This document shows positions 336 to 60,500 of a DNA stretch of 64,000 nt, one piece after another. Each line of letters starts with the position of its first letter. Within the stretch, counting starts at the first letter, position 1. The stretch is from Octopus bimaculoides. Lineage: Eukaryota. The notes beneath the pieces were generated by a model. The model saw only the letters and a program-made list of their open reading frames with translations, did no database searches and had not been told where the DNA came from. Location: assembly GCF_001194135.2 (NCBI RefSeq), contig NC_068981.1, positions 192,534,721 through 192,598,720 of the forward strand, written 5' to 3'. Made by a program: the position numbers and the translations under genes.

Positions 336-667
336 CAGATATACATATGGTCAGATAACTATAGTTATAAGAACCAACAAGAGATTCACCTCATGGTCAT
401 TCTGCTCGACTCGGAGCCAAAGTTCCCTTAAAAAATCACACTACAATGTTTTACAAGAGAAAGGATACACAGGATAACATAGTTTGGGGGTTTTATTCCT
501 GAGAAAAAGGTAAAAAGAGACATAACCACAGATTGGTCCACACCATACAACTTTTTTCCTCATAACTTCCACAAAATTGCCTATTTTTTAACAAAAAATG
601 CAGCAGTAACATTTCATGAGTGGTGATTACAAAAAAAAATTTCTGAATTGTTCTCCATTTCTTTAAG

Positions 668-731
668 GTGTGTCTGTAAAGAGGGATATATTGGGAATGG
701 ACGTACAGAATGTATTGGAAATCTGGTCGTT
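668..731 (+). CDS. exon 1 (EGF end): [21 protein letters not shown]
   Basis: ctttaAG acceptor, GTAAGT donor at 732; phase 2 in, 0 out. Confidence 0.88.
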
Positions 732-1115
732 GTAAGTATTTTTTCTAAAAGGTTCTTAACATTCTACAGTAATTTACGTTGTATCCTTACTACTGTCCCT
801 TATCACCTTCTCCTCTTCTTGCTCCTTCCCGACCCCTATTTTCTTTCCTTTACTTCCCATTCTCAAACTGATATTTACTGTATCCACTTCTTAGCTGTTT
901 AAGAATCTATAAGTTAGAAAGAAATATGCACTCATATATTTGTCAATAGAGTGGGTATATCAATCAGTATTATATCTCCATTACGGCTGATCTTACCAAT
1001 CGGTTTTGCACAGGTGGTTCAACAAGATGTTAGGTAACAACATGATTATGTAACTCTGTGCTCTCCAGAGTTGGCTGTTATGGAAGGAAATATGGCATGT
1101 GTGTGCATGTGTACA

Positions 1116-1174: not shown

Positions 1175-3898
1175 AAAGTTAATATAGGCAGCAGTGTGCA
1201 ATGTTTTACCAAAAAGTAAAATTATAATTGTCACAAAATATGTGCTTTGACTACAACATTAGAACATTTTAGCTTTTATTTCTTGCAATGTAGGTGTTTC
1301 TAACACCCAGTCATATTTAGTGACAATTATAGTTTACCTTTTTGGTAAAAAATTGCAGACTACTATCTATATTAGTTTTCTGTATACACATTTGTGATTT
1401 GCTAAATCATTAGAAAATTACTATTTGTAAACCTCATAATGAGAGATATTCAGCAACAGTACTTTGGAGTAAAGATTGTTTGCCAACATAACATAGTAGT
1501 CCTGGTTTAGGACGAATGTTGCTGTAATTTAGCCCCAGGAGACATCGTCTCCAGCTGGCTAACCGAACAATTATTCTGTGTTGATGAAAGGAAATAACCC
1601 GGAAATCGCAATACACAGATATTGTTTTGAGCTGAGTGGAGGTGCTAGATTCCCTTGTTCGAAAATATAAGGACACAGATCATGTCATATAGCCAGCTGG
1701 AGACGATGTCTCCTGGGCTAAATTACAGCAACATTCATCCTAAACTAGGACTGCCATGTTATTTTGGCAAACAATCTTTACTCGCTAAATCATCTATAGA
1801 TTTTTATGTTGGAAACATATATACTGACAAAGAATTCAGTCCAGAATCAGCCAAAGTCAAGCAGTCCTTACTGACAAGGCAACGGAAATTTTCAAAACTG
1901 ACCAGTCAGTATAAGGAATTCTCAATCAGTTTTTTGGGGTGATTATAGTCCCTGTCAAGATATATGTATACAATTATGTGCTTTGACCACCACAGCATTA
2001 GAGCATTTTAATTTGTATTATATATACAGGGTGTTCCAAAAGTCTCTCTGCAGTAAATATTTCATTGCAAAATAAATATTTATAAGATGGTATAAGAATA
2101 AGACTACAGAAGAATATATTAGTCTTTACAAGACTTTAAAAAACTTTATAAGAGGTGTTGAAAGTGTCGTCCTTCATTTTGAATACATAAGTTGACTCTT
2201 TTACACATGTTTTGGAGAGTCTGACATGGTATGGACCATGTGAAGGTTATGATTGCGTCTTTTAGCTCATTAATAGTTTTTGGGCGATTCTTGTACACTG
2301 ATCCTTTACCTGCTCCCTAGAAAAGAAAGTCTGGCGGTGTTAAATCAGGTGATCTTGGGGGCCAAAGTCCCTTCAAAATAATCTGTTCACCAAAAAACTC
2401 TTGAAGTAGTGCCATGGTGATGCACGAAGTATGTGCTGTAGCTCCATCTTGCTNNNNNNNNNNNNNNNNNNNNNNNNNNNNNNNNNNNNNNNNNNNNNNN
2501 NNNNNNNNNNNNNNNNNNNNNNNNNNNNNNNNNNNNNNNNNNNNNNNNNNNNNNNNNNNNNNNNNNNNNNNNNNNNNNNNNNNNNNNNNNNNNNNNNNNN
2601 NNNNNNNNNNNNNNNNNNNNNNNNNNNNNNNNNNNNNNNNNNNNNNNNNNNNNNNNNNNNNNNNNNNNNNNNNNNNNNNNNNNNNNCCCTGCTTGCGAAG
2701 ACCTGTTGAGGCAAGTGAAATCAAAATCGAATCAAATTTGATGACTGGCACCCATGCCAACCTTCTTTAATTGGACACTAAACTCTTCTTGTGAAGACCT
2801 GTTGGGGCAAGTGAAATTGTAACTGAACCAAATTCGATGACTGGCACCCGTGCCAGTGGAGCGATAACAGCACCATCCGAGAGGGATCACTGCCAGAGCA
2901 GCAGTCTCGCTTCCATGCCGGTGGCATGTATTAAGCACTATTTGAGTGCGATCGTTTCCAGCTTCGCATTACTGGCACTCGTGCCGGTGGCATGTGAACA
3001 AAACATTCGAACGAGGTCGTTGCCAGCACTACTGGACTGACTCCTGTGCAGGTGGCATGTAAAAACACCATTTGAGCGTGGCCGTTGCCAGTACCACCAG
3101 ACTGGCCCTCATGCTGGTGGCATGTAAAAGCACCCACTACACTTTCGGAGTTAGGAAGGGCATCCAACTGCAGAAACTCTGCCAGATCAGATTGGAACCT
3201 GGTGCAGCCATCTGGTTCACCAATCCTCAGTCAAATCGTCCAACCCATGCTAGCATGGAAAGTGGACGTTAAACGATAATGATATATAGTTGAAATTTAC
3301 AGAAAAAAAAATGACGAAAACAGGTAATAAACAACAAGCAGGTGTATTAGTTTGATGCTCAGGAAGGTGAGAAAGTCTTTTATGTTTCGAGCCTATGCTC
3401 TTTTACAGAAAGGAAAACAAGGAAATAAACAAAGAGAGAATAAAAAAACTTGTGGAGTTAGCAGTCAATAATGGCGACTGGTTGGACAAAGGTAGTTAGA
3501 CAGGAGAGCTAGGAAGAAGGAGAGATGATAAAGTACATATGTATATACGTATTTATATGTGTGTGTATATGTATGTAAATGTGCATGTATGTATATACAT
3601 GTATAGATAGATATTGTAAATCTTAAATGATTTTAAAAATGATCTAACTTTTTAGCAGAATTATTATTTTTATCAATGTCACATTGATTGTAATTATGGA
3701 TTTGCTTGGGCCTCATTCCTGGCAAGTAATTCTGTTAATTCCTGCAAAATCTTATTTTAAGTGTAATAAAATCCATGTCAGATGCTAAAACACTTTGCTT
3801 TACTGTTAGAATATATATAAAAGAACATTGTAAGTAAGAGAAACGGTTTCTACATTCCAGACTTCATACTTAATCATCATCGTCATTGTCGTCGTCAG

Positions 3899-3929: not shown

Positions 3930-5754
3930 GTTTAACGTCCGTTTTCCATGCTGGCATGGGATGACTGAAGTCTAGAGAGCCAGGAGGCTTCACCAGGCTC
4001 CAATCTGATCTGGTAAGGTTTCTACAGCTGGATGCCCTTCCTAACGCCAACCACTCCAAGAGTGTAGTGGGTGCTTTTTAAGTGCCACCGGCACAGGAGC
4101 CAGTCAGGTTGGCCTGGCATCAATCACATTCGGATACTGTTTTTTACATGCCACTGGCATGGGAGCCAGTCAGGGGGTACTGGTATTGGCCACATTTGGT
4201 TGGTGCTTTTATGTGCCATCAACATGGGAGCCAGTCAGGTGGACCTGGCATCGATCACGTTTGGATGGTGTTTTTACATGCCACCGTAACAAGAGTCAGT
4301 CAGGGAGCACTGGCCATAGCTACAATTTTGGTTTTACTTGACTCAACAGGTCTTCTCAAGCATATCATATCGCCCGATGCATCAAGGGCACTCTTAAATG
4401 GGCCGGACATGCAACAGTAGCATCGGCCATGGCTGCGATCTCACTTTAGTTACCAGGTCTTCTTAATCACAGCATATTTCCAAAGGTTTCTGCTTCCTGT
4501 CATTGACTCTGTGAGGTCCAATGTTCCAAGGTCATGCTTCACCACCTCATCCCATATGTTCCTGGGTCTACCTCTTCCACAGGTTCCTTCCACAGGTTCC
4601 TTCCATAGGTTCCTTCCACAGGTTCCTTCCACAGTTAGGGTGTGGCACTTCCTCACACAGCTGTCCTCATCCATACACAACACATGACCATACCTATGCA
4701 GTCGTCTCTCTTACACACTACATTTGATGCTTCTTATGTACAACTTTTCTCTCAGGGTACTTACACTCTGTCATGTCTGTACACTGACATTACACATTCA
4801 GTGAATCATACTAGCTTCATTTCTTTCAAGCCTACACATGTCCTCAGCAGTCATGGCCCATGTTTCACTGCCATGTAGCATGGCAGTTTGCATACATGCA
4901 TCATACAGTCTACCTTTTATCCTGAGTGAGAGGCCCTTAGTTGCCAGTAGAGGTAGGAGCTCCCTGAACTTTGCCCAACCTATTCTTATTCTAGCGGCTA
5001 CACTCTCAGAGTAACCATCCCCACTACAGACTTGGTTGCCTAGGTAGTGGAAGCTATCAACTACTTCTAGTTTTTCCCCTTTGCATGTAATAGAATCTTC
5101 TGTGTTTATTGCCCCTTTGCATCTGCCACACACAAAAACTATCTTCCCAGTTAACCTTCTATGATAATAATGAAATCTGCCTTAATACCTTAACACTGAC
5201 CATATCTACACACTTAGTTTGTCTACAGAACCTATTTAGTTGTAATACACTCTATAACAGATTGCCTTGTTATTTTTATCATCGTTGTTGTCGCCATCAT
5301 CATAATTGCCAACATTGTTGTTGTCGTCGTCCTCCCCCATCTTCACCTCCCTATCATCATCAACATCATCAGCTTTTAATGTCCATCTTACATGCTGACA
5401 TGGGATGAACTGAGAGGATCTGATGAAATCCTCTTGGGCAATCCCTCAGGTTGATTCTCTTGAGTGGATTTGGCTGAAGAGAACTTAAAGGAGTCTGTTG
5501 TGGATACATGTTCGTGCATGTATATTTGTGTGTGTGTGAACACACGCATCTGTGCTTCTTTGCTTTGACATTGTATGATAGTTGTAAACGAGTATCACAT
5601 GGAGAAATAATAGCTTGCTTGGAAAAAGATAAGGGTTGACAACAAGAAGGGCATCAGGCCATAGAAAGATTTGCCTCAACAGATTCCATCTAACTCATGC
5701 AAGCATGGAAAGCGGACGTTAAAACAATGATGGTGATGAAGACGGTAATGGTGG

Positions 5755-5793: not shown

Positions 5794-8700
5794 GGATGAG
5801 GATGATGATGATGACGATGACGATGACGATGACGATGGCGATGATGATGATGATAGTGCTGAATTTGCTGCAATTAAACCTTGTTTTCTAAAAAATCATT
5901 CTTCATGCTTTCTTTAGTTTCTTAAATATTCACATTACCATTAAGACATGATTCTTGTTCAGGTAACAATTTTTTATTTCTTCATAGCAAATTGCAGACA
6001 TGAATGATGAAGACGATATTGGTAAGAACAGGTTAAATAATTTCCTAATGATGCTGCAAAAAGTCTACAAAGGTGAATTAACGAAACACGGGAATTACAC
6101 AGTCTTTGTGCCATTAGATCGTGGCTTTAGTAACTTGCTTCAGGACACTACTGTAAGTAAGCTTTCAGACATTATTACTTATAATCATATTTCTCTCTTC
6201 TCTCTCTTTCCTTCTCTCCACTCCCTTGTGTGTGTATGAATGTATATTTTCGCTCTATTTCTATATAAGTCACAGACCAGAGATTCAATTCCTGCATGGT
6301 ATTAATAATCCACAATAATGATGAAATATTGGTATCTACCCCTCTCGGATTCAATCCGAGGTGAGTTGTCTCACCTGGGGCATGGCATTCAGGTGTTTTT
6401 TAAAACTCAGCCTCGTGTAGAGAGCTATATCAGATGTTATCCTGCAGCAAATTTGGTGTATAAACAAAACACAAAACTTTGTTTATTATGGTATTATTAA
6501 AATTTGCTTATTATGATTATTTGGAATCTTTCCTGCTTGGCTGCACCTGTGGAAATTTTAATGTTTAGTGACAATTTTAAAATTTGATGTATTGGTGTAA
6601 ATTTCCATGCTGAATCTCAGGAGATACTTCACAGTTACAGAGGTTTAAATTCTGATTATTTTTACCTGGTGAGAAAACTGGATTTGGAAGTTGTCATTTT
6701 ATGCATGACAGCAAGTGTTGTGAACTGTAAACAAATGAAATATTGGCAGAATTCTGCTTTATGCATGTCTCATATAATCCCTCATATTGGTTTTTTTTTC
6801 TGAATTTTCAGAAAATTTTTGTGAATTTGTATTCTACACATGGGAATTCATATAATTATGCAAAAGCAAAAAAAAAAAAAAGTTTACATGTGTGATTTAA
6901 GGCCGATTTAGCTGTTATATCTCATACCACATGTGTTTTAGGTATCTCTTGCTGCATGTGTTTTAAGCATTTAATAAGTGACAAAAAGAACACATGGTAA
7001 ATAGCTTGGTAACAGCTTGGTTTGTTACCAAAGAAATAGGCACCTATATGTCTGTGACTAAAATTACTCAAAATTTGCAAACTTTAAAAAGCTGTTAACT
7101 CTTTATTTATTGATTTATAGTGAAAAGGAATATCATGTCAATGATAACTTTACAAAACTACACCAATATACCAAATATAAAATCAAATGGAACAAAAATT
7201 GAAGAAACTGAAAAGTGCCAACCAAACAGAAAAGATCTGTTATTTGTTTATCACAGCATTATTCTCATTAAATTCCAATCTAACATGTGTTTCTGCTGGA
7301 ATTTAATGAGAGTAATACTATAAAAACAAATTTTGAAGATGTATAATTCTCCATTCTTGTTTGTGATGTCTTGATTTTATACAGTGTATGCTGTGTGAAA
7401 TCCAGTGAAGTGAACTTGGGAGTTACTTATTGAGTGAAGTACCATTTAATTGTTTATCATTAGCAATTCTGTACATTCCCTGTCATTCGATGTGGTTTGC
7501 GAGATCTAGATTATATCAGAATGCTAATAAGGTATCTACTGAGATTCCAAATCAGTTTTCACTTCAAATTTTATGTAAACTGGCCTTGCAAACAGAGTTG
7601 GTACAGAAACAATTGTAAATGATCATTAAAGATGTGTTAAAGTATTTCTTTGTCTTATTATTTGGATTACACACACACACCCACACACACCCACACCCAC
7701 ACACCCACACACGTGTAATATATATATATATATATATGAGAATAAGTTAGTAACTGTTTCATAAAGTGGTCAATGAGATGGAAAGTTTGCTGACTCATAT
7801 TTGACTCATATTTGAAAAAAAAAAATGATTATTAAATATTAAGATATTCACTTTAGGATGATTTAATTTCAGAGTAAAAATTATTTGCCTACATAACATG
7901 GCAGTCCTGGTTTAGGACGAATGTTGCTGTAATTTAGCCCCAGGAGACATCGTCTCCAGCTGGCTATACGACACAATCTGTGTCCTTATATTTTCAAACA
8001 AGGGAATCTAGCACCCCCACTCACCTCAAAACAATATCTGTATATCGCGATTTCCAGGTTATTTCCCTTCGTCAGCACAGAATAATTGTTTTGAGCTGAG
8101 TGGGGGTGCCAGATTCCCTTGTTCGAAAATATAAGGACACAGATCGTGTCGTATAGCCAGCTGGAGACGATGTCTCCTGGGGCTAAATTACGGCAACATT
8201 CATCCTAAACCAGGACTGCCATGTTATGTAGGCAAATAATCTTTACTCCAAAGTACTGTCGCTGAATATCTCTGGTTGTGAGATTTAAAGATAGTAATTT
8301 TCTGATTTAATTTCAGTTTAGCCAGTTTCTGGAAAATTCAGACCATGTAAGACAAATTCTACGCCAGCACATTTTTCCCGTAAGAGTGTATATAGATGAT
8401 CTCACAGACAACATGTTCTACACATTACAAGGAAACTTTGCCCGCTTCTTTTACAAGGTAAAACAAAAATCTAGTTTTCAATCTCTGATCAGAATATTGA
8501 AAGTAACACATCTTGAAATGTATAGTATTTGAAAACAAAGGCTATAAATCCAGATATGCTTAGTATATGGAAGTTGTGAGGCTCATGCATTTTTGAAGAG
8601 GAGTAAATTGTCATTCTATACAAATGTAATGAGTGTTTCATTGGCATAAAATTACCTTTCTCCTGCAAAAGTTCTGTGCTATTTTGGTGATTCTGGAGCA

Positions 8701-9070: not shown

Positions 9071-12000
9071 TTAACTTCCGCTTTCCATGCTGACATGGGT
9101 TGGACAGTTTGACTGAGGACTAACAAGCCAGAAGGCTGCACCTGTCCTGTCATACAAGCAGTGTCATTCATTTCCAATATTCTGCAAGAACATGTCTGGC
9201 CAGGGGATAATATTACTCTGCTTGGAAACAAGTGAGGGTTGGTAACAGGAAGAGCATCTGGCAGTTGAAAATCTGTCTCAATAAAATCCATCCAATCCAT
9301 GCAAGCATGGAAAAGAGGATGTTAAAACAATGAGGATGACAACGACAATGGCAATGATGATGATGATGATGAGGATGATGATGATGATGATAATAGGATC
9401 ATCTGATGCTGTTGGGAAGGAGAGAGGAAGCTATTTTCGGGCTGAAGATGTACTGCAAATGCTTGCTACAGAGTAGACCCTGTTAAATATACTAAAGGTA
9501 GTGATGGTATTAAACTGGGTGACAAATTCAGTTGACCACCCCAAAACAGAATTGGTCACTCATAAGATTTGGGTCACTCTGAGATTGCAGTAGAAGATTT
9601 TTGCCCAAAATAGTATGCCATATGATAGAACTCAAACCATGAGATTTGGAAACGAACTTCATGCCTACACCTAAGTTATAAACTCCAGAATATAAATGCA
9701 TGTTGGTCTGTTATTATTTGTATTTCTTTCATAAATATACATAATTGTTGCTTCAGACACGAGGAAGAATTTTATTTCATCCAAGAATATTTAGAACAAG
9801 AGCTCCAAAGTTTTCCATGATTTTAGTAAGAAATATGCCCAGAAACATATAGAAGTATTTGAAAATATATGTTTCAAACATTATGATAATAAAAGCTGCA
9901 TTTATATATCATGTGCTGAAATGAATATTTAAATCTAAGAGAATATTAAAGCTGTGTATCTTTTTGATGAATCTATTGATTTTAGAATCTCTGCTTCTCA
10001 TTCTAGGGTAAAAAACTAATTCTAAAATTCCAAGGTTCAAGCAGGCGAAGTCGTGTGCTTAGTATTTATCGTGATATTAGAGCCTCAAATGGACTGATCC
10101 ATATCGTCAACAACCTTATGATGAATGAGCCAGAAATACCAGGAAATCTCTATGTAAGTTGAATTTATATTTATTTTAAATGTATGATTACCTTTGATGT
10201 AACTTCAATAATTACTCTGTGCTGGTGCCACATAAAAAGCATCCATGCTGGTGCCACACAAATAGCACCTGTGCTGGTGCCACATCAGAAGCACCTAGTA
10301 CACTCTGTAAAGGGGTTGGCATTAGGAAAGGCATCCAGCCATAGAATCCGTGCCAAAACAGACAATCGGATCTTGGTACACCTCTCCAACCTGCCAGCTC
10401 CTGTCGAATTGTCCTACCCATGCCAGCATGGAAAACGGAGGCTATTGGATGATAATGATGAATCAGTAATACTGGCAAGGAAAAAAAACATATGAGCCAG
10501 TGTGGGAGTATCTATGAAATAGTTGCCAAGTCTCCCTCAAATCACACAATTTGATGTAGGAATGGAATTCCCTGTGTGATGTGTCAGCCATGGCTTATTA
10601 TGTTATTAAAATGAAGTTGATTACGATGGACCAAAAGAGAAGAAATTTGAAAATATAGCACAGAAAAACAACAGTTGTGTCAAAATATTCATAGTCACAA
10701 AAATGTGGTAAAGTTCATATTAACAGAAAAGCTCACAAGAAAAGAAATACAGAATTAACAGCATCCATTGAAATTCCAGGATTATTTTGAAAATTTTAAG
10801 ATGGAACTGTACATTTTTCTACAGCATTTGATTCATGAAATGGTGTAAAAATCCTCTTAGGTAGCATTTTTTTCAATTGCATCGACTTGCTATAAAAGCA
10901 GATAGTAAATTTACCTTATCCTTATTCTTAAAGAAAGTTCTGGAGAGTGCAGTTCAATTTTAATAGTTATTTTTTCAAAGCTATAATGGAAGTAATAATG
11001 GTGTATATTTGGCATATTTTGCTTTATGAGTTCAATAAAGGCAACAACACAATGGAAAGTGCAAGGAATATTAATGCAGTATATGAGGAACGGACAATAA
11101 ATGTAAGCCAGTCTCAACAGTGGTTCCAGAAATTCTGAGCCAGAAACTATAGCCTCAAAGACAAGCCTCATCGTAGAAGATCTGTAGAGCTCAATGAGGA
11201 CGTCCTGCGAACCCTGGTGGAACAAAATCCCATCGTAACTGTTGAGGAATTAACAGAGAAGCTTGGATTTGGTCATTCAACCATTCATTGACACCTGTGT
11301 GCCATGGGAAAAGTCAGCAAATTGGGTCAGTGGGTTCCTCACAAACTTTCTGAGTCTAATCACAGGCAGAGAGTGAATGTGCTCTTCTTTGCTGTAACAT
11401 CTCATGAATGAACCCTATTTGGACGGAATAGTGAATGATTATGAGAAATGAGTTCTCTATAAAAATGTCAAGCGCTGAAGACAGTGGGTAGGTGTTGTTA
11501 TCTGTTTGGTGGGATAGGAAAGGTGTAGTCCACTTTGAAGGTAAGGTACAAGAAGCCAGGTCTGGTTGGTTTGAATATAAAACAGGTGGAATATTTTGAC
11601 CAGATATGACCAGTTTAAAAGGCTAAAAAGTTAATCACACTATCTACTTACAGCTGTTCTTATTTTCCAGTCTTGGAGGACTGTCTATTTCACAGAACAC
11701 TGTCCATTTAAAAATCTTCAAACTTTACATGAATGCCAGGACTTTTGATGATGATTGCTTTTATCTAACCAACATATGTTTTCTGAATAAAACAATCAAT
11801 TTTTATATTGTAGCAAGATTTCGTGACTTTCATCATGGGGCATTCTGACTTCCAAGAATTTGGATCCTGGATTACGGTAAGTTCAATCTATTCTAAGGGA
11901 AAAGGTTTGGCTCATCTTAAATGGGGATGAAAGGTTTTTTTCCAGGTTACACAGGGGAAAATATCTTGTACATGTTCACTTAGCATGCTAGAAATAGTTA

Positions 12001-15000: not shown

Positions 15001-16617
15001 GTCTTCTGTTAAAGGTTCCAGTCAATGGATAACAGTCAAGTACGAGGAGAAACAGAATTTATTGGTAAACAACATTAGTTGGAGCACTTTAAGAATGGTG
15101 AAGTTATCTCTCAGTGTCACACTTTGTACCTTTCTAAAGTCAATGAAATAAAAGTATTATTAAAATAGGGGAGGAGGCAATTTGAACAGGAATCGTCTCT
15201 TTTCATACAAAGGCATATGTTCATTTGTGTGTAAAAGTGTATATAATCAAAATAAATTATATCAACATAGTGATTAATTAATTCTTTCATGAATCCTAGT
15301 AGAGTATAATGTCTGTGATAAATCTCATTTTCTGTAGTGTTTAATATAAGGACAACTCTTCCAGTGGCTGGTTGTATGCTAATTATCACAGTTCAGTTTA
15401 TCCAAGAAAGCCTAATTCTTGTTTTCAGTTAAAGTATTATCATCAATATCATAATCATTTACTTTAGTCTCTAAATAAATAATTCCAGCATGACAAGTCT
15501 TTGCACAATTCAGCAAATTTACTATTTGCTGTTTAGACATAAAAACAGCAGTTCTTATCAGGTTATGAACAACAGAACCAGTGTCTGTAGCTGATGAAGC
15601 ATAACAATGCAGAAATATGTGTCTTACAATCTAAAGACATTACTTATGGCTGCATGGTGTGTTTTTCCCACACCATTGTCTATAAGAAGAATTTCTCTTC
15701 TGAGATAGTATCTGCAGCCAAGGTCTTTCCATCTTTGAGTGTACATGAATGTGCTTACTGTAATTTTCATGTGATCACATGATCAAACAGACTATTTGAT
15801 ATTGTCATACGCTGCTGGTCACAATGTGCTTTGTGCCACTTTTTTAGCTTTCAAATGATGCCACCCTCCTGGTGAGGTGAGGAGGCCAATATTGCCATGA
15901 TCAGAAGGCCAAGCCATCGTAGGGTGTACCCATTTACAGTTGAGTGGACTGGAAAAATATGAAATGAAGTGTTTTGCTCAAGAACACAACATGCCCCTTG
16001 CTCAGGGAATCAGATCCATGATCTAGTAATTATGAATACATCACCTTAACCACTAGACCATGTGCCTTTATGACTATAGCTGTACACACCTTTATTTCAA
16101 TCATCATAGTTCAGTATGCTTCTGGCTACTAGAATTCACATTTCTTATTTCAAATTTAAAAAGAAAATAATTGTATTCTAAAAAAATTGGCACGTTGATT
16201 ATGATGAAGTAAAACAAATATCATTCTTGTTTGGAAGTCAATCCTTTTGTGTGTAAGAATTATTTAGAACTTCAATGATTTTACATTTATTTCTACCAGA
16301 GAACCATTACTGATCTGATTGATTCCAAGAAAATGTATTCATTGGGGAGAACTACATTCCGCATTAAAATATCAAGTAATGTAAGTGAATCTTCTTTACC
16401 CAGTTTCAATAATAAGAGCTTTCTTTTATCTGGTTATTTAGTTCATGTTTATGCTGTCTTTATGAAGCTTTTCAGAGGAGATTGTTTTCCAAGAGGCATT
16501 AAGTCTGTGCATTACTGTCTTTCTCATTATAATCACAACTTTCTTCATCTCCATCCCCATCAATTCTCATCCTCCTTGTCATCATTGTTGTCACCATTGT
16601 TGTCACCATTGTCATTG

Positions 16618-16653: not shown

Positions 16654-19600
16654 CGAATATGTATATATAAAGCAATAGTATGTTCCTACCTACCTACAAC
16701 TTGTGTCATGCTGAGGGACATAACTTAAACAATAAAACAGTTGGTGGTTATAGAAGTAGTGATAGTGGTGAAAGCATTGGTGTTGATCATAGTGGATAGA
16801 GAAAGATATGGAGAAAGAGTGAGAGAGAGAGAAGGAAGAGATTAGCATTTACAGAAGAGAGATAGAGGGAAAACATGAAAGAAAATGACTGAAAAACAGA
16901 GAGAAAAGAAGAAATAATTTAAAAATAAAAGATGACAATGGTAAATGGAGGTTGTGGAGTGGCTGAGCACTCCACAGACATGTGTACCCTTAACCTCTCA
17001 TGGAGATTCAATGTGAAACAGAATGTGACAAGGCTGGCCCCTTTGAATTACAGATATTTACTCATTTTTGCCAGCTGAGTGGATTGGTGCAACATGAAAT
17101 AAAGTGTCTTGCTCAAGGACAAAATGTGTTGCTAGGAATTGGACGCATGACCATTAGGTCATGTGTCCAATTCCTAGCAACACTTCAGCCACTTAGCCAT
17201 GAGTCTTCACACACCTGCGGTCATCATAGTTATAAAGTGGCCATGGTGATATTACAGTTCTCAGAGCATGTGTGTGTGTGTGTGTGTGCGTTTATGTGTG
17301 CCTGCGTGCACCATTAGCATTTTCCTCTTTGTTCTTCTTCTTTCCTACCTTTTACTACTACCACTTCAATTAACACTTGTCACAATTTCTTCTTCCATCT
17401 CTCCCTCTCCTCCCTCCGTCTCTCTCTCTCTTTCTCTCTCTTTCTTTCTATCTATGTAGCCTACCATTCACTATCATCTCCACCATCACGTCACATCAGA
17501 CAACTAGAGCTCTCAGCTTTCATTAGCAGATTCAGTGGCATATCCACAGGTTTCACTGCATAATTTCTTTAAGCCTGGTGGCATTGCATGCAGTCAGGAG
17601 AGATTTTTAACTAATTTTCTATATGAAAGCTATGACTTCCAAAGTCATTTCAGGGTTGTCCCACTTCGTATATGGTGCTGACAATAGCTAATTAGCTTGA
17701 AATGCATTCCTAGGTTCAAAGAAGGTATTAAAAACAGGGTTGTCTCTCTTGGTATCTGGTGCTGATGATTGCTAATTAGTTTGATGTGCATTTATCAATA
17801 TTTCAGTCCATTATCAAGGATATAGTTAATTCACTACAATGCAGCTTCTCTGAAATGCCACTGGTAGCATTCTTGAGAAGAGTACAACTTTATTAAAACT
17901 TTAAAAATAGAAAACAAATAACTAAATAATATTCCAAATTAACTATTTTTTTGTGTGTATTTAAATTTCATAATGAATTTCAGTGCTTACAAAATATTTT
18001 GTGTCTTTGAGTAGGGTCAAATTCATTTTGGTCCAAATGCAAACATGACTCAATCAGGTGTTCCAGTGAAGAATGGAATTGTTCATTTAATCGAAGGTTT
18101 ACTCTTTCCTGATGATTTGGAAACTCTGGTGCCCCATAACTGTGATAATGTAACCTTCAAAGCTGTTCATGTAAGTATTAAAAGTTTTGGAATAATATTG
18201 TTATATTATTTTATAAAAAAAAACATTGCAGAGGCTTAGAGGGAAAATACAGAAAACATTCTCAACAATTTAAAGTATTAGACACAAACTTAAAGAGACT
18301 TCATAATAAAAAGATGTGTCAAGTGTTAGTGTTTGTATTTGTACCTAAACAAGTGCTACATTGAACCAAACTGGGGTAATTTCGTTTTATCATATTGTTG
18401 TAAAACAATATGATAATATAACTGTTGTAAATGGTATCTTGTAAAACTGGAAAAGAACAATGCATAGCTTTTCTCATGTTTCTATATATTTACAGTTGAA
18501 CACATCAAAACCTATCAGTGTAAGGTTTAGTTATAATGTCTCTCATCAGAATATACATCTGGTGGTACCAGGACCGATTTGCTTTCATTGCTTTGATGAT
18601 TTCTTGGACTCAAAGTTAAAGGGTACAATCTTACAATCACTTGTATTTTCGATACAATTCTTAAATGTTCCTAGTCTAAATTCATTCCATGACATTCTCG
18701 AAACTTTGAATGTAATGCCCTTTGTTTCAGGAATCAGTGATCTAAATATGCAATGAAATTACTTGAACTCAAACTTAGCTAATTCACACATTGGGATGGT
18801 CATGGATGGAATGTCTTTAATCATAGGTCTTCTCAAACAAGGTGGTATTGAGATTAACTAACAACCTAATAATGAGTAGTTTCAGTAATACAATGTATTA
18901 TGTCAGAATCTATTCAGTTTTACAATGGTAAAAGTTGGTAAGTATCTCAAAGAGAATGATGGTAGTGGGGGGGGGGGACAAACACAGATACACAAATACA
19001 TACATGCATACATACATATACATAGACGGGCTTCTTTCAGTTTCCGTCTATGAAATCCACTCACAAAGCTTTGGTCAGCCAAAGCTATAGTAGAAGACAC
19101 TTGCCTAAGGTACTACGCAGTGGGACTGAACCCAGAATCATGTGATTGGGAAACAAGCTTCTTACCATGAATGACATTGATGGGTAGGTATGAGAGGCTG
19201 GATCTGGTTAGTTTTAATGTAAAACAAGGAGAAGATTTGGGTCAGATATGGCTGGATTAAATGCTAAAGGATTAAAGGTATTAATTGAAATAAAATTTGA
19301 AACTTAATGTTTTTATTTCCTCCAGTAATCCCAAAGCAAATGTTATATTGCAGGGAGAATGTGGTCTGTGCGAGAGTGACCTCCATTGTTTGCAGCCTTC
19401 TGATATACCAACAGTAAGTAGTGCTTCTGTTTTGATCATGGTTAGCATTGTGTAAATATCTCAACTGAATCAAGAAGTTTGAAGTAAAATGTTTACTGCA
19501 ATCATTCATACATTATTTACATTATTTACAATTAACGGATATTTGTCCTCATCTTGTTTGCTGTTAACACAACGTCTTGGCTGATATACCCTCCAGCCTT

Positions 19601-19716: not shown

Positions 19717-20360
19717 NNNNNNNNNNNNNNNNNNNNNNNNNNNNNNNNNNNNNNNNNNNNNNNNNNNNNNNNNNNNNNNNNNNNNNNNNNNNNNNNNNNN
19801 NNNNNNNNNNNNNNNNNNNNNNNNNNNNNNNNNNNNNNNNNNNNNNNNNNNNNNNNNNNNNNNNNNNNNNNNNNNNNNNNNNNNNNNNNNNNNNNNNNNN
19901 NNNNNNNNNNNNNNNNNNNNNNNNNNNNNNNNNNNNNNNNNNNNNNNNNNNNNNNNNNNNNNNNNNNNNNNNNNNNNNNNNNNNNNNNNNNNNNNNNNNN
20001 NNNNNNNNNNNNNNNNNNNNNNNNNNNNNNNNNNNNNNNNNNNNNNNNNNNNNNNNNNNNNNNNNNNNNNNNNNNNNNNNNNNNNNNNNNNNNNNNNNNN
20101 NNNNNNNNNNNNNNNNNNNNNNNNNNNNNNNNNNNNNNNNNNNNNNNNNNNNNNNNNNNNNNNNNNNNNNNNNNNNNNNNNNNNNNNNNNNNNNNNNNNN
20201 NNNNNNNNNNNNNNNNNNNNNNNNNNNNNNNNNNNNNNNNNNNNNNNNNNNNNNNNNNNNNNNNNNNNNNNNNNNNNNNNNNNNNNNNNNNNNNNNNNNN
20301 NNNNNNNNNNNNNNNNNNNNNNNNNNNNNNNNNNNNNNNNNNNNNNNNNNNNNNNNNNNN

Positions 20361-36380: not shown

Positions 36381-37379
36381 ATACACACGCGCACATCATC
36401 TAATACCACTGCTTTGTCAACTAAACCTTTCATTCCTGAAGTTCAATAATCAATTCCTGAGTTTTCTGCTCAATTTCCAATCCATCACCCAATAAAATGT
36501 TTTAATTTCTAATCAAAACCAATTTACTAATATTCATTGACCTTTTAACATTCCAATATTTCTTTTCTTCTTAAAGGACGTCATGGTGACAACACGAGAA
36601 ACATCAGCAGTCATGATTCAAACTGATTTACTCTCTAGCAATGGTTACATCCATATAATAGATCAGGTAAGATCAATAATCAATTATACAAATATGATTG
36701 ATTTTTTCCCCTTCTCAGAAGATTTACATTCATATAATTTTGATGAATTAATCAGTGAAGGTGCATGGTCTAATGTTTAGAGTCCTGTAGAGACAGTCAC
36801 AGGATTATGGTTTCCATTCTAGCACCAGGCAATGCTTTGTATTCGTTTCATGTTGCTTTGGGATCACTTCAACATCTGACATGTGGCACATCATGCACCA
36901 GTATAGGTAGTTCTGTTATTCTTTTACTTGTTTCAATCATTTTGACTGCAGCCATGCTGGAGCACTGCCTTTAGTTGAACAAATCAACCCCAGGACTTAT
37001 TCTTTGTAAGCCTTGTACTTATCCTATCGGTCTCTTTTGCTGAACTGCTAATTTACGGGGATGTAAACACACCAATGTCAGTTGTCAAGTGATGGTGGTA
37101 GGGACAAACACAGACACAAACACACACACACTTATATGTATTTATATATATATATGTGTGTATATATATATCATCGTCATCATCATCATCGTTTAACATC
37201 TGTTTTCCATGCTGGCATGGGTTGGACGGTGTGACTGGAGTCTGGGAAGCCAGTGGGCTGCACCAAGCCCCAATCTGATCTGGCAGTGTTTTTGCAGCTG
37301 GATGCCCTTCCTAATGCCAACCACTCCAAGAATGTAGTGGGTGCCTTTTACATGCCACTGGCACAGGGGCCAGAGGAGC

Positions 37380-46000: not shown

Positions 46001-48587
46001 AAGTAGTGGCTCACCTTGAAGAGAGACTCCCTGATCTCTGATCTCTGAGATGTACACCTTGTCAAGTAATGTTGCTGTCATAATACTCCAAATAATATTT
46101 ATGAGGCAATATCTAATCTGACATTACTTTCTTCACTTTAAATCATGAGATTTCCTATAGCTCTTCAGACACCCTTGAGTTCTGTCGATTTTTCAAGGAA
46201 AGGAATTTATTGGAGTAAAGATTATTTGCCAACATAACATGGTAGTCCTGGTTTAGGACGAATGTTGCTGTAATTCAGCCCCAGGAGACATCGTTTCTAG
46301 CTGGCGCTGGCTATATGACATGATCTGTGTCCTTATATTTTCGAACAAGGGAATCTAGCACCCCCACTATATATAAGGACACAAATCGTGTCGTATAGCC
46401 AGCTGGAGACGATGTCTCCTGGGGTTGAATTACAGCAACATTAGTCCTAAACCAGGACTGCCATGTTATGTTGGCAAATAATCTTTACTTGAAGGTACTG
46501 TTACTGAATATCTCTCATTGTGAGATTTACAAATAGTAATTTTCTAAGGAATTCATTGTATTCAAGTTTTCCTTGTCTTTTCTTCTGTCCTGAATCTTTT
46601 ATCTTACACCATCACACCATCATGAAGGCATGTAGCCTTGTGATAGGGTGTTGTACTCACATTTACAAGATCATTGATTTTGATTCCTAGACTGGGAGGT
46701 CCGTTGTATCCACGAGTAAATCACTTTATTTCCCATTGCTCCAGTCCACTCAGCTGTAGATGGGTCACCCTACAATGGACTGGCATCCTGAACAGGGTGG
46801 GAAATGTTGTGATCTTGGCCACTTATATATGCCAAAGAAACCAGATAACTAGCCCTATGAGTCCAAGGACTTGTGGATAGTAAAGTCCAGGGGACCTGCT
46901 TGCATCACGCCATCTCTTTCTTTTACATCCTCTCCTTACTTGATCAAATATCAAGCAACTTGTAACCTTCAGCTAAATTTGCTACATTAATGATATTTCT
47001 CTTTTAGACTTCTTGTATATCCTGCGATGAAGAATTCACTTGTCCACCAGAATATCATAAAGTAGCTGTATTAAAACATGTTTGCAGTTATAAAACCCCA
47101 GAGGGAGAATTACTAGGATGTACAGCACTGTGTCGAAGGCTTAAAGTTGTAAGTTATTTCTCCTTAACCATTTTGACACTAACACATTTAAGATCACCCT
47201 CAGTCCAGTGACACAAACTTCATGTTATAAAGTGTTTTGAATAAAAAAACAAAACTATCAAAATTTTATGTTACTTTATGTTCCAGACAACCAGCTTAAT
47301 AATTCTTTCTAATTTTGACTCAAGGCCAGCAATTTTGAGGGGAGGGAGCAATTATATATGTCAACCTCAGTACTTTATCATCATCATTTAATGTCTGTTT
47401 TCCATGCTGGCATGGGTTGGATGGTTTGACTGAGACTGGCAAGCCAGGAGGCTGCACCAAGCTCCAATCTGATTTGGCAAAGTTTCTACAGCTGGATGCC
47501 CTTCCTAATGCCAAGCACTCTGAGAGTGTAGTGGGTGCTTTTTATGTGCCACTAGTACAGGGGCCAGTCGGGCAGCACTGGCATCAGCCATGCTGAAATG
47601 GCGCATTTTACGTGCCACCAGCATGGGGGCCAGTTGGGTGGCACTGGCATCGACTATGCTCAAATGGTGTTTTTTACGTACCACCAGCATGATAGCCAGA
47701 AAGGCAAAGTTGATCTCAGTGAAATTTGAACTCAGAACGTAAAGGCAGAAAAGATGCCACTAAGTAGTTTGTCTGCTATGCTAATCAGTCTCCCAGCTCA
47801 CTGCCTTGCACCACTTTTATAACAACAAAGGACATTTACTAAATTATTTATTATTTTTGAAATAATTACAACAAAGGCATTGTATTTTAGCAAAAAACAT
47901 GGTAAGAAAAGGATTACTGCTGTAATCCACCAGGCAATCCATCGAGAGGGATTGAATACACGACCAACAAACTTTGAACCCTCCCTGAAGAGGCTCCTAA
48001 CTAAAAATGAACCAATAAAAAACAGCATCATACACAACTGCTTGATTGATGTTGAAAATATATGTCTATGATCTTATGTGGTGTATAAAATCACATGTGG
48101 TAAATGCAATGAATTTTACATCAGAAATACCATATGTATATACGTATAGCCACAGCTATGATGACATACTCTTTTTTCCCCCCTTTGGTCCAGAATGATA
48201 ATATCTGGTTGATTGCATGAAGTTTGTTATCAGTCTGTACAGTAAAATTACTTAAGACTTTAAACTGATTGTTCTCTATTACACTCTCTATTTGATGTTG
48301 ACACTATTTTCTTCTTACTCTTAATCTTCTTTTCCACCGTACGTTTCAGTGAAGTGCCATAACTACACAGTGGTGTTTGCATCTATATTCCTCTGTGCCA
48401 AAGGACTATAAGACCTTACGTGCAGAACAGATTCCTCTTTTTCATTCTTACTCTGCACTCAGCACTTTCTGTGCTTTCATCTATTTTTGCCGAAATGGCA
48501 TTCGTCTGCAATGATTGGCTTTGAGTGACCTTTATTTCTCTTTAACTGTTTCTCCTTCTGTTTCTTTCTAATGTTCTCCATTCTTCA

Positions 48588-49187: not shown

Positions 49188-49239
<52 letters not shown>

Positions 49240-57532: not shown

Positions 57533-60500
57533 GCGAGAGAGAGAGAGATCTGCCAATCAAATTGGCAGATCGAAATGATCGTCAATGAATCATTATACAA
57601 TCTCCACATAATTAATTAAATCAATGGCTAACTAGCGCAATTGACCTGCTTCTTCTTGTGTTTGTTTCTCCATTCTCCACTTGATTATATACATATATTG
57701 CTGGCTTGCCAGACCTCAGTCAAACCGTCCAACTCATGCCAGCATGGAAAATGGATGTTAAATGACAATGATGATGATGATGATGATGATGATACCTTAA
57801 TACTTCGATATGTTGATAGATTTTGGCCAGTATTTGTTTTTTTCAGTTTCTCTATACCAGACGCACTCACAAATCTTTTGTTATCTTGGTGTTATAGTAG
57901 AAAACACTTGCTCAAGTTGCTGTGAAGTGCGATTGAACCCAAGATCCCATGGTTGGGAAGCAAGCTTCTCTGTCACCCAGTCATATCTTCACTCGTACTC
58001 ATAGTGGGCATTAAAAGGATAATGATGAAATCCTGTAGTAAAGATTGTTTGCCAATATAACATGGCAGTCCTGATTTAGGACTAATGTTGCTGTAATTTA
58101 GCCCCAGGAGACATTGTCTCAAGCTGGCTATACGACATGATCTGTGTCCTTATATTTTCGAAAAAGGGAATCTGTGTCCTTATATTTTCGAAAATATAAG
58201 GATACAGATCGTGTCATATAGCCAGCTGGAGATGATGTCTCCTGGGGCTAAATTACAGCAACATTAGTCCTAAACCAGGACTGCCATGTTATGTTGGCAA
58301 ACAATCTTTACTCTAAAGTACTGTTGCTGAATATCTCTTGTTGTGAGATTTAAAAATAGTAATGAAATCTTGTATTTCGTAAGAACTCATTTTATTTTAT
58401 CATTAATACTTATTGCTTCGTCTCATTCAGCTCTATATTATACAAGAAGAAGTGGTAGAAATAAGAATTCTTGAGACAAACATCTTAAACATGAATGGCT
58501 ACATACACATCGTGGAAACACCTTTGTGGTATAACTACAAAGTAACTGCTAAGGTAAGTCAATTCGAAATACAGTTTCTATTTTCTAAGCTTTATTTCTA
58601 TGTTCTTAAGTAATTACCAAACAATAAGTTATTTCAAATATATTAAGGAATAGTTACCTTTTTTTCATGCCAATCCACATAAGACCACCACTGACTATGT
58701 GAAACAAACTGTTCATTTGATGTCTATTCATTTTGTCCATCCTAAATAATGGATAGCCCAGTTAATTTGACAAGAGTTATTAAATAATTGTTTCTAATTC
58801 TGGCACAGGGCCAGCAGTTTTTGAAGGGACGGGGAAGTCGAATACATTGACCCCAGTACTTGACTGGTACTTATTTTATTGACCAACTGCATAAAGATGA
58901 AAGGCAAAGTCAACCTTAGCAGAATTTGAACTCAGAATGTAAAGACTGATGAAATGTTGGCAAGCATTTTGTTTGGCATCCTAACGATTCTGCCAACTCA
59001 TTGCGTTAATGATTATTAAATAATGAAATAACAAATAAAGTAAAAATAAAGCAATAACAAATACTAGATTCTATACTTTCATATTTTTATTGCCAAATTT
59101 TTACACCTTATAACACCATAAGGTGTAAAAGATGTGATGGAAATAAGAATTCTTGAGAGAAACATCTTAAACATAAATGGCTAAATACATCTCCAATGTA
59201 ATGTAGAAGTAAGTCTGTTGAGTGGATTCTAAGAAGAGGCACCAGTCTCAAGTTTGGTAAACCAAGTTGGAATGTCTTTGATGCCAGGTTTCATCAGTCA
59301 CAGCTGATCTGGAGATACACAATAGCAACAGCAGCAACAATCAGAATATAAACTTTTATTAATGTCAGGTATTTATATTCTGTAATAATTCTGGAACTGG
59401 TCAGCAGCTAATATGATTTGCTGCTGTCATTTCATGTCCACTTTTCCATGGTTGCATGGGTCAGATGAAATTTGTTGAGACAGATTTTCTATTCCTGGAT
59501 GCCCTTCCAGTCACCAACCTTTGCCTGTTTCCAAGCAAAATTATGTTTCCTCTTCCAATTTTTTATGGAAGACTGGAAATGCTTCACTTGTGCGATGCTG
59601 ATGCCCTTTTGCAACCATTCACATGTACACATGCACACATGTGCACACGCACACATGCATATGCACAAACACATGTACATACATGCAGACACACACATGC
59701 ATATGCATGCACACACACACGCACACAAACACATACATACACACATGCGCGCGCACACACACAAACATTACATACAAAACACACTAACAAATACTTATTA
59801 TTTTGACTATTTCTTTGTAGGTGAAGGAGGAGGGACCGCATCGGGTGAGTCTATACAGTTTTATGACATGTTAAGGTTTGTCTGGTCTCTGTTAACTGCT
59901 AGTAAAACTAACTCTGATGACTGTTACTAATAATAACTATATTAACTATTGCTATTAAATACTACAAAAATTTATTTTTATAACTATTACTAACATTATT
60001 AACTTTTACTAACACAAGCAACTAACTGTTGTTAACACAAGCTACATTAAGTGTTACAGATAATAACTATATTACATATTAGTAACCTTAGTTCTATTCA
60101 CAGCTAGTATTCTAATTCAATTAATTCTTTCTAACAGTATTACCTGTTATTAACACTAACTATTAACTTGTATTAATACTACTTGTACACAAAATCCATA
60201 TATATTTAATTCTTTATTGCCCACAAGGGGCTAAACATAGAGGGGACAAATAATGACAAAGGGACTAAGTTGATTACATCGATCCCCAGTGCGTAACTGG
60301 TACTTATCTCCACTATCATTAGTCATGCTAATCCTACAAAGTTACTAATCATAACTCCATCATTTTTGGATTATATTACTTGTTACTAACCTTAACTTTA
60401 TGAATTCTTTCTTACTCATATTACTTATTACTACCTCTAACACAATAAAATCTGACCACCTTTGCTAATTCTTACTAACACTAACAATATTAACTATTAC

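What the first reader, a model, noticed from the sequence alone, without database searches (positions are those of the whole stretch)
7872..8303. Rod-like fold-back element capped by a hammerhead ribozyme
Seen: two ~165-nt arms (about 7 mismatches) enclose a 45-nt loop. On the minus strand the loop reads as a complete type-I hammerhead: stem I UCUGUG/UACAGA (continuous with the long arms), core CUGACGA, stem II GGG/CCU, GAAA, palindromic stem III AUCGCGAU, and a predicted cut after AUA (+ coordinate 8043). One deviation: an A/G apposition at the base of stem II. A 55-nt tail lies on one side only. Established: minimal type-I hammerheads with palindromic stem III occur in Penelope-like pseudo-LTRs and retrozymes, and Penelope-like elements form inverted pLTRs with tails. 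Inference: a non-autonomous, viroid-shaped, self-cleaving retroelement that an annotator would mislabel as a MITE.
Basis: partly seen in the sequence, partly recalled or inferred. Interest (0 to 1): 0.9.

Follow-up and report, generated by a model that had tools for sequence, protein, structure and literature searches.

The report
Hammerhead-bearing Penelope-type retroelement insertion, fold-back form
This is an old, dead insertion of a Penelope-type retroelement in an intron: two head-to-head copies of one RNA's tail end, one of which carries a hammerhead ribozyme motif. It is a real but already known kind of element.

Summary
Arms 7872-8035 and 8085-8248 are 164 nt and 96% complementary, with 49 nt between them and a 54-nt one-sided tail.

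The centre reads on the minus strand as a type-I hammerhead. About 0.004 such motifs are expected per window by chance. No Rfam hammerhead model matches it, and the conserved G10.1-C11.1 pair is replaced by A.G.

Three more copies lie in the window, with duplications of 10, 12 and 11 bp. All keep both outer ends and the one-sided tail, but their inner junctions differ, and two lack the hammerhead.

Some substitutions are shared by both arms of one copy but differ between copies. So the rod was probably built at each integration from two head-to-head, 5'-truncated copies of one template. This is the published Penelope-like signature, not an intrinsic viroid-shaped RNA.

The hammerhead belongs to the template RNA, about 170 nt upstream of the reverse-transcription start.

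No outside copies or RT/GIY-YIG partner could be retrieved, and catalysis is untested.

Verdict: new member of a known kind, modest interest.

The parts
7859..7872 (.). Left copy of the 14-bp target-site duplication TGATTTAATTTCAG
   Evidence: Exact direct repeat D1 with 444-nt spacing; coordinates re-checked.
7873..8035 (-). Left arm: the no-tail copy. Its sense strand is the minus strand. Its outer end (complement of AGTAAA...) is the internal reverse-transcription start.
   Evidence: Inverted repeat I1. All four copies share the same outer end, (G)AGTAAAGATT.
8036..8084 (-). The 49-nt centre, a type-I hammerhead motif on the minus strand. Helix I is 8081-8076 with 8042-8037. The core CUGACGA is 8075-8069. 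Helix II is 8068-8055 with loop AAAUAA and an A.G apposition at 10.1/11.1. GAAA is 8054-8051. Helix III AUCGCGAU is 8051-8044. The cut is predicted between A8043 and U8042. It continues upstream into UAU and AACAAU (8084-8090), which c1 and c2 share.
   Evidence: Direct reading. Descriptor hit with 0.004 expected by chance. The dimer fold forms the 8-bp intermolecular helix III: -29.7 kcal/mol against 2 x -11.8. No Rfam hammerhead hit.
8085..8248 (+). Right arm: the copy that carries the tail. Its sense strand is the plus strand. Its inner end lies at the base of the hammerhead hairpin.
   Evidence: Inverted repeat I1, 96% complementary; alignment of the arms.
8249..8302 (+). One-sided 54-nt tail, extending to the distal reverse-transcription start
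   Evidence: Unique sequence between the right arm and the target-site duplication. A homologous 50-58-nt tail sits on the same side in all four copies.
8303..8316 (.). Right copy of the 14-bp target-site duplication
1411..1783 (-). Family copy c2, in inverted orientation. It keeps the hammerhead centre (plus strand 1576-1619), but with C3>U, G10.2>A and a helix III G>A change. Its right copy is truncated 63 nt further out. It is flanked by an exact 10-bp duplication (1401-1410 and 1784-1793).
46213..46546 (+). Family copy c3. It has no hammerhead and its inner junction lies at ...CACCCCCACT/ATATATAAGG. It is flanked by a 12-bp duplication with 1 mismatch (46201-46212 and 46547-46558).
58037..58362 (+). 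Family copy c4. It has no hammerhead. Its inner junction lies at the palindrome TTTTCGAAAA and includes a short direct duplication. It is flanked by an 11-bp duplication with 1 mismatch (58026-58036 and 58363-58373).

Best explanation
Window 7873-8302 is a relic of one Penelope-like (PLE-type) retrotransposition event in an intron of a stabilin-like gene.

Shown:
- The insertion consists of two head-to-head copies of the same 3'-terminal stretch of one sequence.
- It is flanked by a 14-bp target-site duplication.
- Both outer ends are constant across the family.
- Only one side carries the 54-nt tail.
- The inner junction differs in every family copy.

Inferred, from published PLE biochemistry:
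- The element's nuclease cut both target strands, and each nick primed reverse transcription of the template RNA. One cDNA started at the distal start site and so carries the tail. The other started at the internal site and has none.
- The two cDNAs were joined, or one snapped back, at a self-complementary spot.
- In this copy that spot was the hammerhead hairpin, so the minus-sense copy runs through the ribozyme and the plus-sense copy stops at its base. That places the hammerhead at the apex of a 164-bp rod.

The hammerhead belongs to the template RNA. Copies c1 and c2 share the core and the upstream AACAAUUAUUCUGUG. The cut site lies 170 nt upstream of the internal start and 224 nt upstream of the distal one.

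The motif is a metazoan-style type-I hammerhead: helix I of 6 bp, helix II of 3 bp plus an A.G apposition, and helix III of 2 bp closed by the palindromic tetraloop CGCG.

Inferred: in active source copies it would cut multimeric or read-through transcripts as a dimer, or with protein help. In this solitary copy, now 4% decayed between its arms, it most likely does nothing.
For: - Fold-back, tail and 14-bp target-site duplication.
- Four copies with duplications of 14, 10, 12 and 11 bp in AT-rich targets.
- Constant outer ends and variable inner junctions.
- Arm alignment: at GATT[A/G]TTT the state is A/A in c1, G/G in c2, A/A in c3 and G/G in c4. A T at GCC[T]A is shared by both c1 arms only. 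A C at AATT[C]A is shared by both c3 arms only. Two of four doubleton sites fall within one copy, against 14% expected.
- Published PLE signature:
  - High 5' truncation, an adjacent inverted 5'-truncated copy, and a tail at one end only (PMC8557442).
  - Duplications of 8-10 bp, a tail at the 3' end of one inverted pLTR, and palindromes at head-to-head junctions (PMC3846280).
  - Both strands cut and extended, two internal start sites that define the tail, a preference for ATT targets, and a hammerhead just upstream (PMC11167929).
- Hammerhead motif beyond chance: 0.004 expected per window.
- Its helix dimensions match the canonical metazoan type-I description (PMC4209133).
- A mismatch at the base of helix II has a precedent in the weakly active axolotl HHR_Amex2 (PMC7229834).
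- The dimer fold forms the 8-bp helix III.
Against: - No RT/GIY-YIG reading frame was recognised in the window, though only a subset of ORFs went through Pfam.
- There are only four copies, and only two carry the centre. Copies from outside the window could not be retrieved.
- Rfam hammerhead models do not match.
- The highly conserved G10.1-C11.1 pair is absent in both c1 and c2.
- Helix II shows two independent hits between c1 and c2, not a compensatory change.
- The tail is 50-58 nt, against the published 30-40 nt.
- The shared-arm statistic is weak: P about 0.1 for the doubletons and about 0.09 for the 4:4 site (the second figure is my own combinatorial estimate, not a tool result).
- One CpG site looks side-specific: it is lost in all 4 left arms and kept in all 3 right arms.
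Confidence: 0.7

Rival explanations
1. The 430-nt hairpin is itself the mobile unit: a non-autonomous, viroid-shaped RNA with an apical hammerhead. Copies c2-c4 would then be internal-deletion derivatives.
For: c1 folds into an almost perfect rod, -323.5 kcal/mol on the minus strand. c1 is the youngest copy, with arms 95.7% identical. One CpG site looks side-specific. c2 can be read as a microhomology deletion of a c1-like sequence.
Against: A retroelement copied from its 3' end should show one-sided 5' truncation. Instead, all four copies keep both outer ends and lose only the middle. Three non-CpG substitutions would each need a compensatory double change to appear in both arms of one copy. 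One hammerhead per RNA gives a single cut and no unit-length or circular product.
Confidence: 0.13
2. It is a tRNA-related, Pol III-driven SINE-like element carrying a hammerhead, of the Sm-alpha/Sj-alpha type. A LINE would mobilise it, and the inversions would arise by twin priming.
For: A box-A-like AGCTGAGTGG, 17 nt, then a box-B-like GTTCGA lie in sense orientation just 3' of the cut site in both c1 and c2. Sm-alpha/Sj-alpha are SINE-like, tRNA-derived and carry hammerheads (PMC2770079). LINE fragments are present in the window (identified by eye).
Against: ARAGORN finds no tRNA-like fold. The 17-nt spacing between the boxes is shorter than in tRNA genes (my own knowledge). There is no A-rich or microsatellite 3' end. 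Twin priming inverts an upstream segment rather than duplicating the same 3' end, so it does not explain the one-sided tail (my own knowledge).
Confidence: 0.08
3. It is a MITE or fold-back DNA transposon, and the hammerhead-like centre is a coincidence.
For: It has long terminal inverted repeats and a short length. Rfam returns only generic long-hairpin (miRNA precursor) matches.
Against: The target-site duplications vary from 10 to 14 bp. The true termini are not inverted repeats of each other, because of the 54-nt tail. The chance expectation for the hammerhead motif is 0.004 per window, and far less within one 49-nt centre. The same motif is inherited in c2.
Confidence: 0.03

Closest known systems
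Penelope-like element (PLE) insertions with inverted head-to-head pseudo-LTRs and a one-sided tail (Penelope/Poseidon/Neptune type; PMC3846280, PMC8557442, PMC11167929)
   Same: - Two 5'-truncated copies joined head to head, with 3' ends facing outward.
- A tail on one side only.
- Short target-site duplications of variable length in AT-rich DNA.
- A self-complementary sequence at the junction.
- A hammerhead a short distance upstream of the reverse-transcription start.
   Different: - No RT/GIY-YIG reading frame is linked to it here.
- The tail is 50-58 nt rather than 30-40 nt.
- The hammerhead has a proper short helix III with a palindromic tetraloop. It is not the 'minimal' form reported for most metazoan PLEs.
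- The arm and tail do not run into an open reading frame: a stop at GCTGAATATC is conserved in all copies (direct reading).
Metazoan non-LTR retrozymes with canonical type-I hammerheads (PMC7229834). A 2026 preprint proposes they are non-autonomous PLE derivatives (10.64898/2026.07.22.740005).
   Same: - Hammerhead architecture: helix I of 6 bp, a short helix II, and helix III of 2 bp plus a tetraloop 'as in invertebrate HHRs'.
- Low GC content.
- Duplications longer than 4 bp.
- A unit in the few-hundred-nt range.
- The axolotl HHR_Amex2 also has a mismatch (U.U) at the base of helix II and works better as a dimer.
   Different: - Retrozymes are head-to-tail tandem repeats that give unit-length circular RNAs. 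Here each locus is a dispersed inverted pair with one hammerhead or none.
- No tandem copy is present in the window.
Sm-alpha / Sj-alpha SINE-like retroposons of schistosomes (PMC2770079 and the references it cites)
   Same: - A short, dispersed, non-coding retroposon family carrying a type-I hammerhead.
- Possible Pol III box A/B-like motifs.
   Different: - No tRNA-like fold is detected.
- The fold-back architecture with a tail is not a described feature of Sm-alpha (my own knowledge).
- Rfam Hammerhead_1 recognises the schistosome motifs but not this one.
MITEs and fold-back DNA transposons
   Same: Short length, long inverted arms, intronic location.
   Different: Variable duplication length, asymmetric ends, an inner junction that varies while the ends stay constant, and a ribozyme motif in the centre.

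Membership tests
Hammerhead ribozyme, type I (canonical metazoan form; Rfam Hammerhead_1) | Conserved core C3-U-G-A-N-G-A9, G12-A-A14, and a non-G residue at position 17 | tested here: met
   CUGACGA 8075-8069, GAAA 8054-8051 and A17 at 8043 on the minus strand. c2 carries an inactivating C3>U.
Hammerhead ribozyme, type I (canonical metazoan form; Rfam Hammerhead_1) | Three helices around the core with helix I open. Metazoan pattern: helix I 6 bp, helix II 4 bp, helix III 1-2 bp with a 2-4 nt palindromic loop (PMC4209133). | tested here: met
   Helix I is 6 bp. Helix II is 3 bp plus one apposition. Helix III is A-U and U-A closed by CGCG. The dimer fold makes the 8-bp helix III.
Hammerhead ribozyme, type I (canonical metazoan form; Rfam Hammerhead_1) | G10.1-C11.1 pair at the base of helix II | tested here: not met
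   A8068 is apposed to G8055 in c1, and the same is true in c2. The only precedent found is the U.U mismatch in axolotl HHR_Amex2.
Hammerhead ribozyme, type I (canonical metazoan form; Rfam Hammerhead_1) | Score at or above the Rfam covariance-model threshold | tested here: not met
   No hammerhead family is listed at gathering score or at E<=10 on 551 nt and 65 nt.
Hammerhead ribozyme, type I (canonical metazoan form; Rfam Hammerhead_1) | Conservation of the core and covariation in the helices across family members | tested here: inconclusive
   Only two copies carry the centre. From CpG polarity, the inferred ancestor is a better hammerhead (G10.2-C11.2, intact AUCGCGAU). There is no compensatory change.
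Hammerhead ribozyme, type I (canonical metazoan form; Rfam Hammerhead_1) | Site-specific self-cleavage in Mg2+ | not testable with these tools
   This needs in vitro transcription of monomer and dimer constructs.
Penelope-like element (PLE) insertion | Head-to-head inverted 5'-truncated copies (pseudo-LTR arrangement) with a variable junction | tested here: met
   Four copies have constant outer ends and four different inner junctions.
Penelope-like element (PLE) insertion | Short extension ('tail') at one end only | tested here: met
   A tail of 50-58 nt sits on the same side in all four copies. It is longer than the published 30-40 nt.
Penelope-like element (PLE) insertion | Short target-site duplication of variable length | tested here: met
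   14, 10, 12 (1 mismatch) and 11 (1 mismatch) bp.
Penelope-like element (PLE) insertion | RT plus GIY-YIG reading frame in a partner that shares these ends | tested here: inconclusive
   None was recognised among window ORFs of at least 60 aa, by inspection and by Pfam on a subset.
Metazoan non-LTR retrozyme | Head-to-tail tandem repeats of 150-450 bp, each with a hammerhead | tested here: not met
   There are no tandem units. Each locus has one hammerhead or none.
Metazoan non-LTR retrozyme | Expression as unit-length linear and circular RNA | not testable with these tools
   No transcriptome data were available.
MITE / fold-back DNA transposon | Symmetric terminal inverted repeats and a target-site duplication of fixed length | tested here: not met
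   The termini are asymmetric because of the tail, and the duplications range from 10 to 14 bp.
tRNA-derived SINE | tRNA-like head with properly spaced A and B boxes | tested here: not met
   ARAGORN finds no tRNA in the window. The box-like motifs are only 17 nt apart.

The most novel reading that the evidence does not exclude
The hammerhead hairpin may have a role at the DNA level. Its self-complementary helix I and closing stem would act as a preferred fold-back (self-priming) or cDNA-cDNA annealing point that creates the head-to-head junctions of Penelope-type insertions. This would give PLE hammerheads a role that does not depend on RNA cleavage.

All four inner junctions in the window sit at or next to self-complementary sequence: the hammerhead hairpin in c1, TTTTCGAAAA in c4, beside CCAGCTGG in c2, and TATATA in c3.
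Probability: 0.12. Interest if true: 0.6.

Novelty: new member of a known kind. Interest (0 to 1): 0.3.

Why it matters
The element shows, in one locus, a retrozyme-style type-I hammerhead sitting inside an insertion that carries the full Penelope-like integration signature: head-to-head copies, a one-sided tail and a variable target-site duplication.

That is direct structural support for the recent proposal that animal hammerhead repeats are non-autonomous relatives of PLEs.

It also matters for annotation. Such fold-backs would be called MITEs or miRNA-like hairpins by automatic pipelines; Rfam's only sub-threshold hits here are miRNA precursor models.

The role of hammerheads in endonuclease-containing PLEs is still described as unclear (PMC8557442). 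A genome-wide map of where the head-to-head junctions fall relative to the hammerhead hairpin would be a cheap test of one possible role.

Tried and rejected
- Rfam at three scales found no hammerhead family. It returned only generic long-hairpin matches to miRNA precursor models, far below their thresholds. I treated these as artefacts of the 164-bp stem.
- A metagenome scan with a 20-mer spanning the arm/centre boundary gave five loci. All were chance 20-21-nt matches with no further similarity.
- Three viral-contig scans with arm and centre patterns gave nothing.
- A protein word search with the 72-aa ORF across the centre, intended to pull spurious ORFs from other genomic copies, found no candidate. 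So no family copies from outside the window could be obtained.
- I aligned the second hammerhead-like motif (15591) with c1 and c2 to build a covariance model. The alignment was not structurally sound and homology is uncertain, so I built no model.
- I looked for a reading frame running from the hammerhead through the arm and tail, as in the anole PLE. Both candidate ATGs stop before the end, and the stop is shared by all copies (reading).
- The tRNA-SINE idea was tested with ARAGORN, which was negative.
- I considered identifying the host organism through the stabilin-like exons. I did not run it, because it would not change the verdict and the search is costly.
Full report
**1. The observation**

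The fold-back is real. One search reports arms 7872-8035 and 8085-8248, 164 nt and 96% complementary, with 49 nt between them. A unique 54-nt stretch (8249-8302) follows the right arm only.

The inserted element is therefore 7873-8302.

Read on the minus strand, the centre has every part of a type-I hammerhead at the stated coordinates:
- Helix I: UCUGUG (8081-8076) with UACAGA (8042-8037).
- Core: CUGACGA (8075-8069).
- Helix II: GGG with CCU around the loop AAAUAA, and an A8068.G8055 apposition at its base.
- GAAA (8054-8051).
- Helix III: AUCGCGAU (8051-8044).
- A17 at 8043.

**2. Is the hammerhead more than chance?**

I wrote a descriptor requiring:
- helix I directly before CUGANGA;
- helix II of at least 3 bp, with or without one mismatch at 10.1/11.1;
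- GAAA;
- an A15.1-U16.1 closure;
- a non-G residue at position 17;
- the return strand of helix I.

In the real window it finds this site (helix I of 6 bp) and one other. In 2000 dinucleotide-preserving shuffles of the window, both strands together give 0.004 hits with helix I of at least 6 bp and 0.009 with at least 5 bp. For the motif to fall in the 49-nt apex of the one large fold-back is far less likely still.

The helix dimensions match the published description of canonical metazoan type-I hammerheads: helix I of 6 bp, helix II of 4 bp, and helix III of 1-2 bp capped by a 2-4 nt palindromic loop, acting as dimers (PMC4209133). These dimensions were not all required by the descriptor.

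A two-molecule fold forms the 8-bp intermolecular helix III and is 6 kcal/mol better than two monomers.

Three things count against it:
- No Rfam hammerhead model matches at any threshold tried.
- The G10.1-C11.1 pair, described as highly conserved, is replaced by A.G.
- Catalysis is untested.

A mismatch at the base of helix II has one published precedent. The axolotl HHR_Amex2 has U.U there, cleaves weakly as a monomer and better as a dimer (PMC7229834).

**3. The family**

BLAST of the element against the window finds three more copies.

| Copy | Coordinates | Orientation vs c1 | Target-site duplication | Hammerhead centre |
|---|---|---|---|---|
| c1 | 7873-8302 | same | 14 bp, exact | present |
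| c2 | 1411-1783 | inverted | 10 bp, exact | present, mutated |
| c3 | 46213-46546 | same | 12 bp, 1 mismatch | absent |
| c4 | 58037-58362 | same | 11 bp, 1 mismatch | absent |

- The targets are AT-rich.
- All four copies have the same two outer ends and the tail on the same side.
- The middle differs in each. c1 has full arms plus the centre. c2 has the centre, but its right copy starts 63 nt further out. c3 and c4 lack the centre and join at other points.
- c1 and c2 share the hammerhead and also the upstream AACAAUUAUUCUGUG. So helix I, its 3-nt/1-nt internal loop and a closing stem AACAAU/AUUGUU belong to the source sequence and are not created by the inversion.
- Where c1 and c2 differ in the hammerhead, CpG polarity points to an ancestor with G10.2-C11.2 and an intact AUCGCGAU. 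c2 has since acquired C3>U and other hits. Nothing suggests selection after insertion.

**4. What the rod is**

If the 430-nt hairpin were the mobile RNA, copying from its 3' end should give one-sided 5' truncations. Instead both outer ends are always complete and only the centre varies.

In the alignment of the eight arms, three non-CpG substitutions are shared by the two arms of one copy and differ between copies:
- A/G at GATTNTTT splits the copies cleanly: c1 and c3 against c2 and c4.
- A T is unique to both c1 arms.
- A C is unique to both c3 arms.

Two of the four doubleton sites fall within one copy, against 14% expected (P about 0.1). My own combinatorial estimate for the clean 4:4 split is about 0.09. 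This is modest support, but it points the same way as the junction data: both arms were copied from one template at each integration.

This is the published signature of Penelope-like elements:
- High 5' truncation, an adjacent inverted 5'-truncated copy, and a tail at one end only (PMC8557442).
- Duplications of 8-10 bp, a tail at the 3' end of one inverted pseudo-LTR, and palindromes at head-to-head junctions, read as self-priming (PMC3846280).
- A purified PLE protein that cuts and extends both target strands, prefers ATT, and starts reverse transcription at two internal sites whose spacing is the tail. A hammerhead lies just upstream, and it was not required for insertion in vitro (PMC11167929).

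Here the predicted cut lies 170 nt from the internal start and 224 nt from the distal one.

**5. Mechanism proposed**

Shown: a double head-to-head insertion with a target-site duplication, a tail on one side, and the hammerhead inherited from the template.

Inferred:
- Target-primed reverse transcription ran from both nicks.
- The two cDNAs were joined, or one snapped back, at self-complementary sequence.
- In c1 that site was the hammerhead hairpin, which explains why the ribozyme caps the rod.
- In c4 the junction is the palindrome TTTTCGAAAA. In c2 it abuts CCAGCTGG, and in c3 it lies at TATATA (direct reading).

In active source copies the hammerhead would process multimeric or read-through RNA, as a dimer or with protein help.

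In this copy the hammerhead strand is antisense to the host gene, and the arms have diverged 4.3% from each other. I regard it as inert. The plus-strand intronic transcript would still contain a 164-bp duplex of -309 kcal/mol.

**6. Context**

The window carries exons of a stabilin-like gene on the plus strand, with Pfam hits to Fasciclin, EGF_STAB1-2 and EGF_3. The element lies in one of its introns.

The sequence is eukaryotic, about 35% GC, rich in microsatellites and other repeats, and has six N gaps.

**7. Comparison, novelty and limits**

The element works like a PLE-type insertion. It meets the architectural criteria for one, but the defining RT/GIY-YIG partner was not found.

It resembles non-LTR retrozymes in its ribozyme but fails their tandem-repeat criterion. 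It resembles Sm-alpha/Sj-alpha in being a short dispersed hammerhead retroposon. It fails the MITE criteria.

A 2026 preprint already argues that animal retrozymes derive from PLE pseudo-LTRs. This is therefore a new member of a known kind, with a minor ribozyme variant (a purine-purine apposition at 10.1/11.1).

The main limits are that only four copies were available and that no copies from outside the window could be retrieved.

Noticed in passing
window 15583-15631 (+): A second hammerhead-like motif: GUCUGUAG CUGAUGA A-GCAU AACA AUGC-A GAAA UAUGUG U C UUACA. Helix I is 5 bp and helix II is 4 bp. It has an A.A apposition at 10.1/11.1, the same kind of deviation as in the finding. It is single-copy in the window and has no fold-back around it. 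The chance expectation is 0.009 per window.
   Followed up: partly
window 8094-8126 (+) and 1630-1662 (+): A Pol III box-A-like AGCTGAGTGG, 17 nt, then a box-B-like GTTCGA lie in sense orientation just 3' of the hammerhead cut site in both copies that carry the centre. ARAGORN sees no tRNA, and the spacing is short for a type-2 promoter.
   Followed up: partly
window 627-899, 5988-6236, 28207-28461, 32124-32330, 36541-36777, 52313-52558 and others (+): These are exons of a stabilin-like gene, with Pfam hits to Fasciclin, EGF_STAB1-2 and EGF_3. All four copies of the element lie in its introns. c1's hammerhead strand is antisense to the gene, whereas c2's mutated hammerhead is in the sense orientation.
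   Followed up: partly
window 58120-58190 (copy c4): The inner junction of c4 is a perfect palindrome, TTTTCGAAAA. It is preceded by a short direct duplication of CTGTGTCCTTATATTTTCGAAAA. This looks like a template jump followed by a snap-back.
   Followed up: no
window 4453-5181 (-), 48910-49344 (-), 2317-2760 (-), 10932-11135 (+), 26903-27208 (+), 34684-34953 (+): Decayed fragments of other mobile elements, recognised by eye from the translations. They include LINE-type reverse-transcriptase C-terminal regions, mariner-type transposase pieces and a Pif1/Helitron-like helicase piece. Pfam gave no significant hit for the ones submitted.
   Followed up: no
window 63072-63121 (+); related pieces 15895-16073, 46620-46797, 17072-17124: A tRNA-like SINE head: AGCTTAGTGG, 34 nt, then GTTCAATTCC. 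Several diverged copies are present. Another abundant short repeat is linked to microsatellites; its translations contain ...[11 protein letters not shown]....
   Followed up: no
window 2454-2686, 19717-20360, 25226-25753, 27847-28107, 49608-49749, 53255-53470: Six runs of N (assembly gaps), several flanked by microsatellites.
   Followed up: no
arm alignment column 109 (c1: 7974-7979 / 8141-8146): One CpG site (CACGAT) is lost in all four left arms and kept in all three available right arms. After allowing for the number of CpG sites this may be chance, but it is the one observation that fits an intrinsic arm difference.
   Followed up: partly
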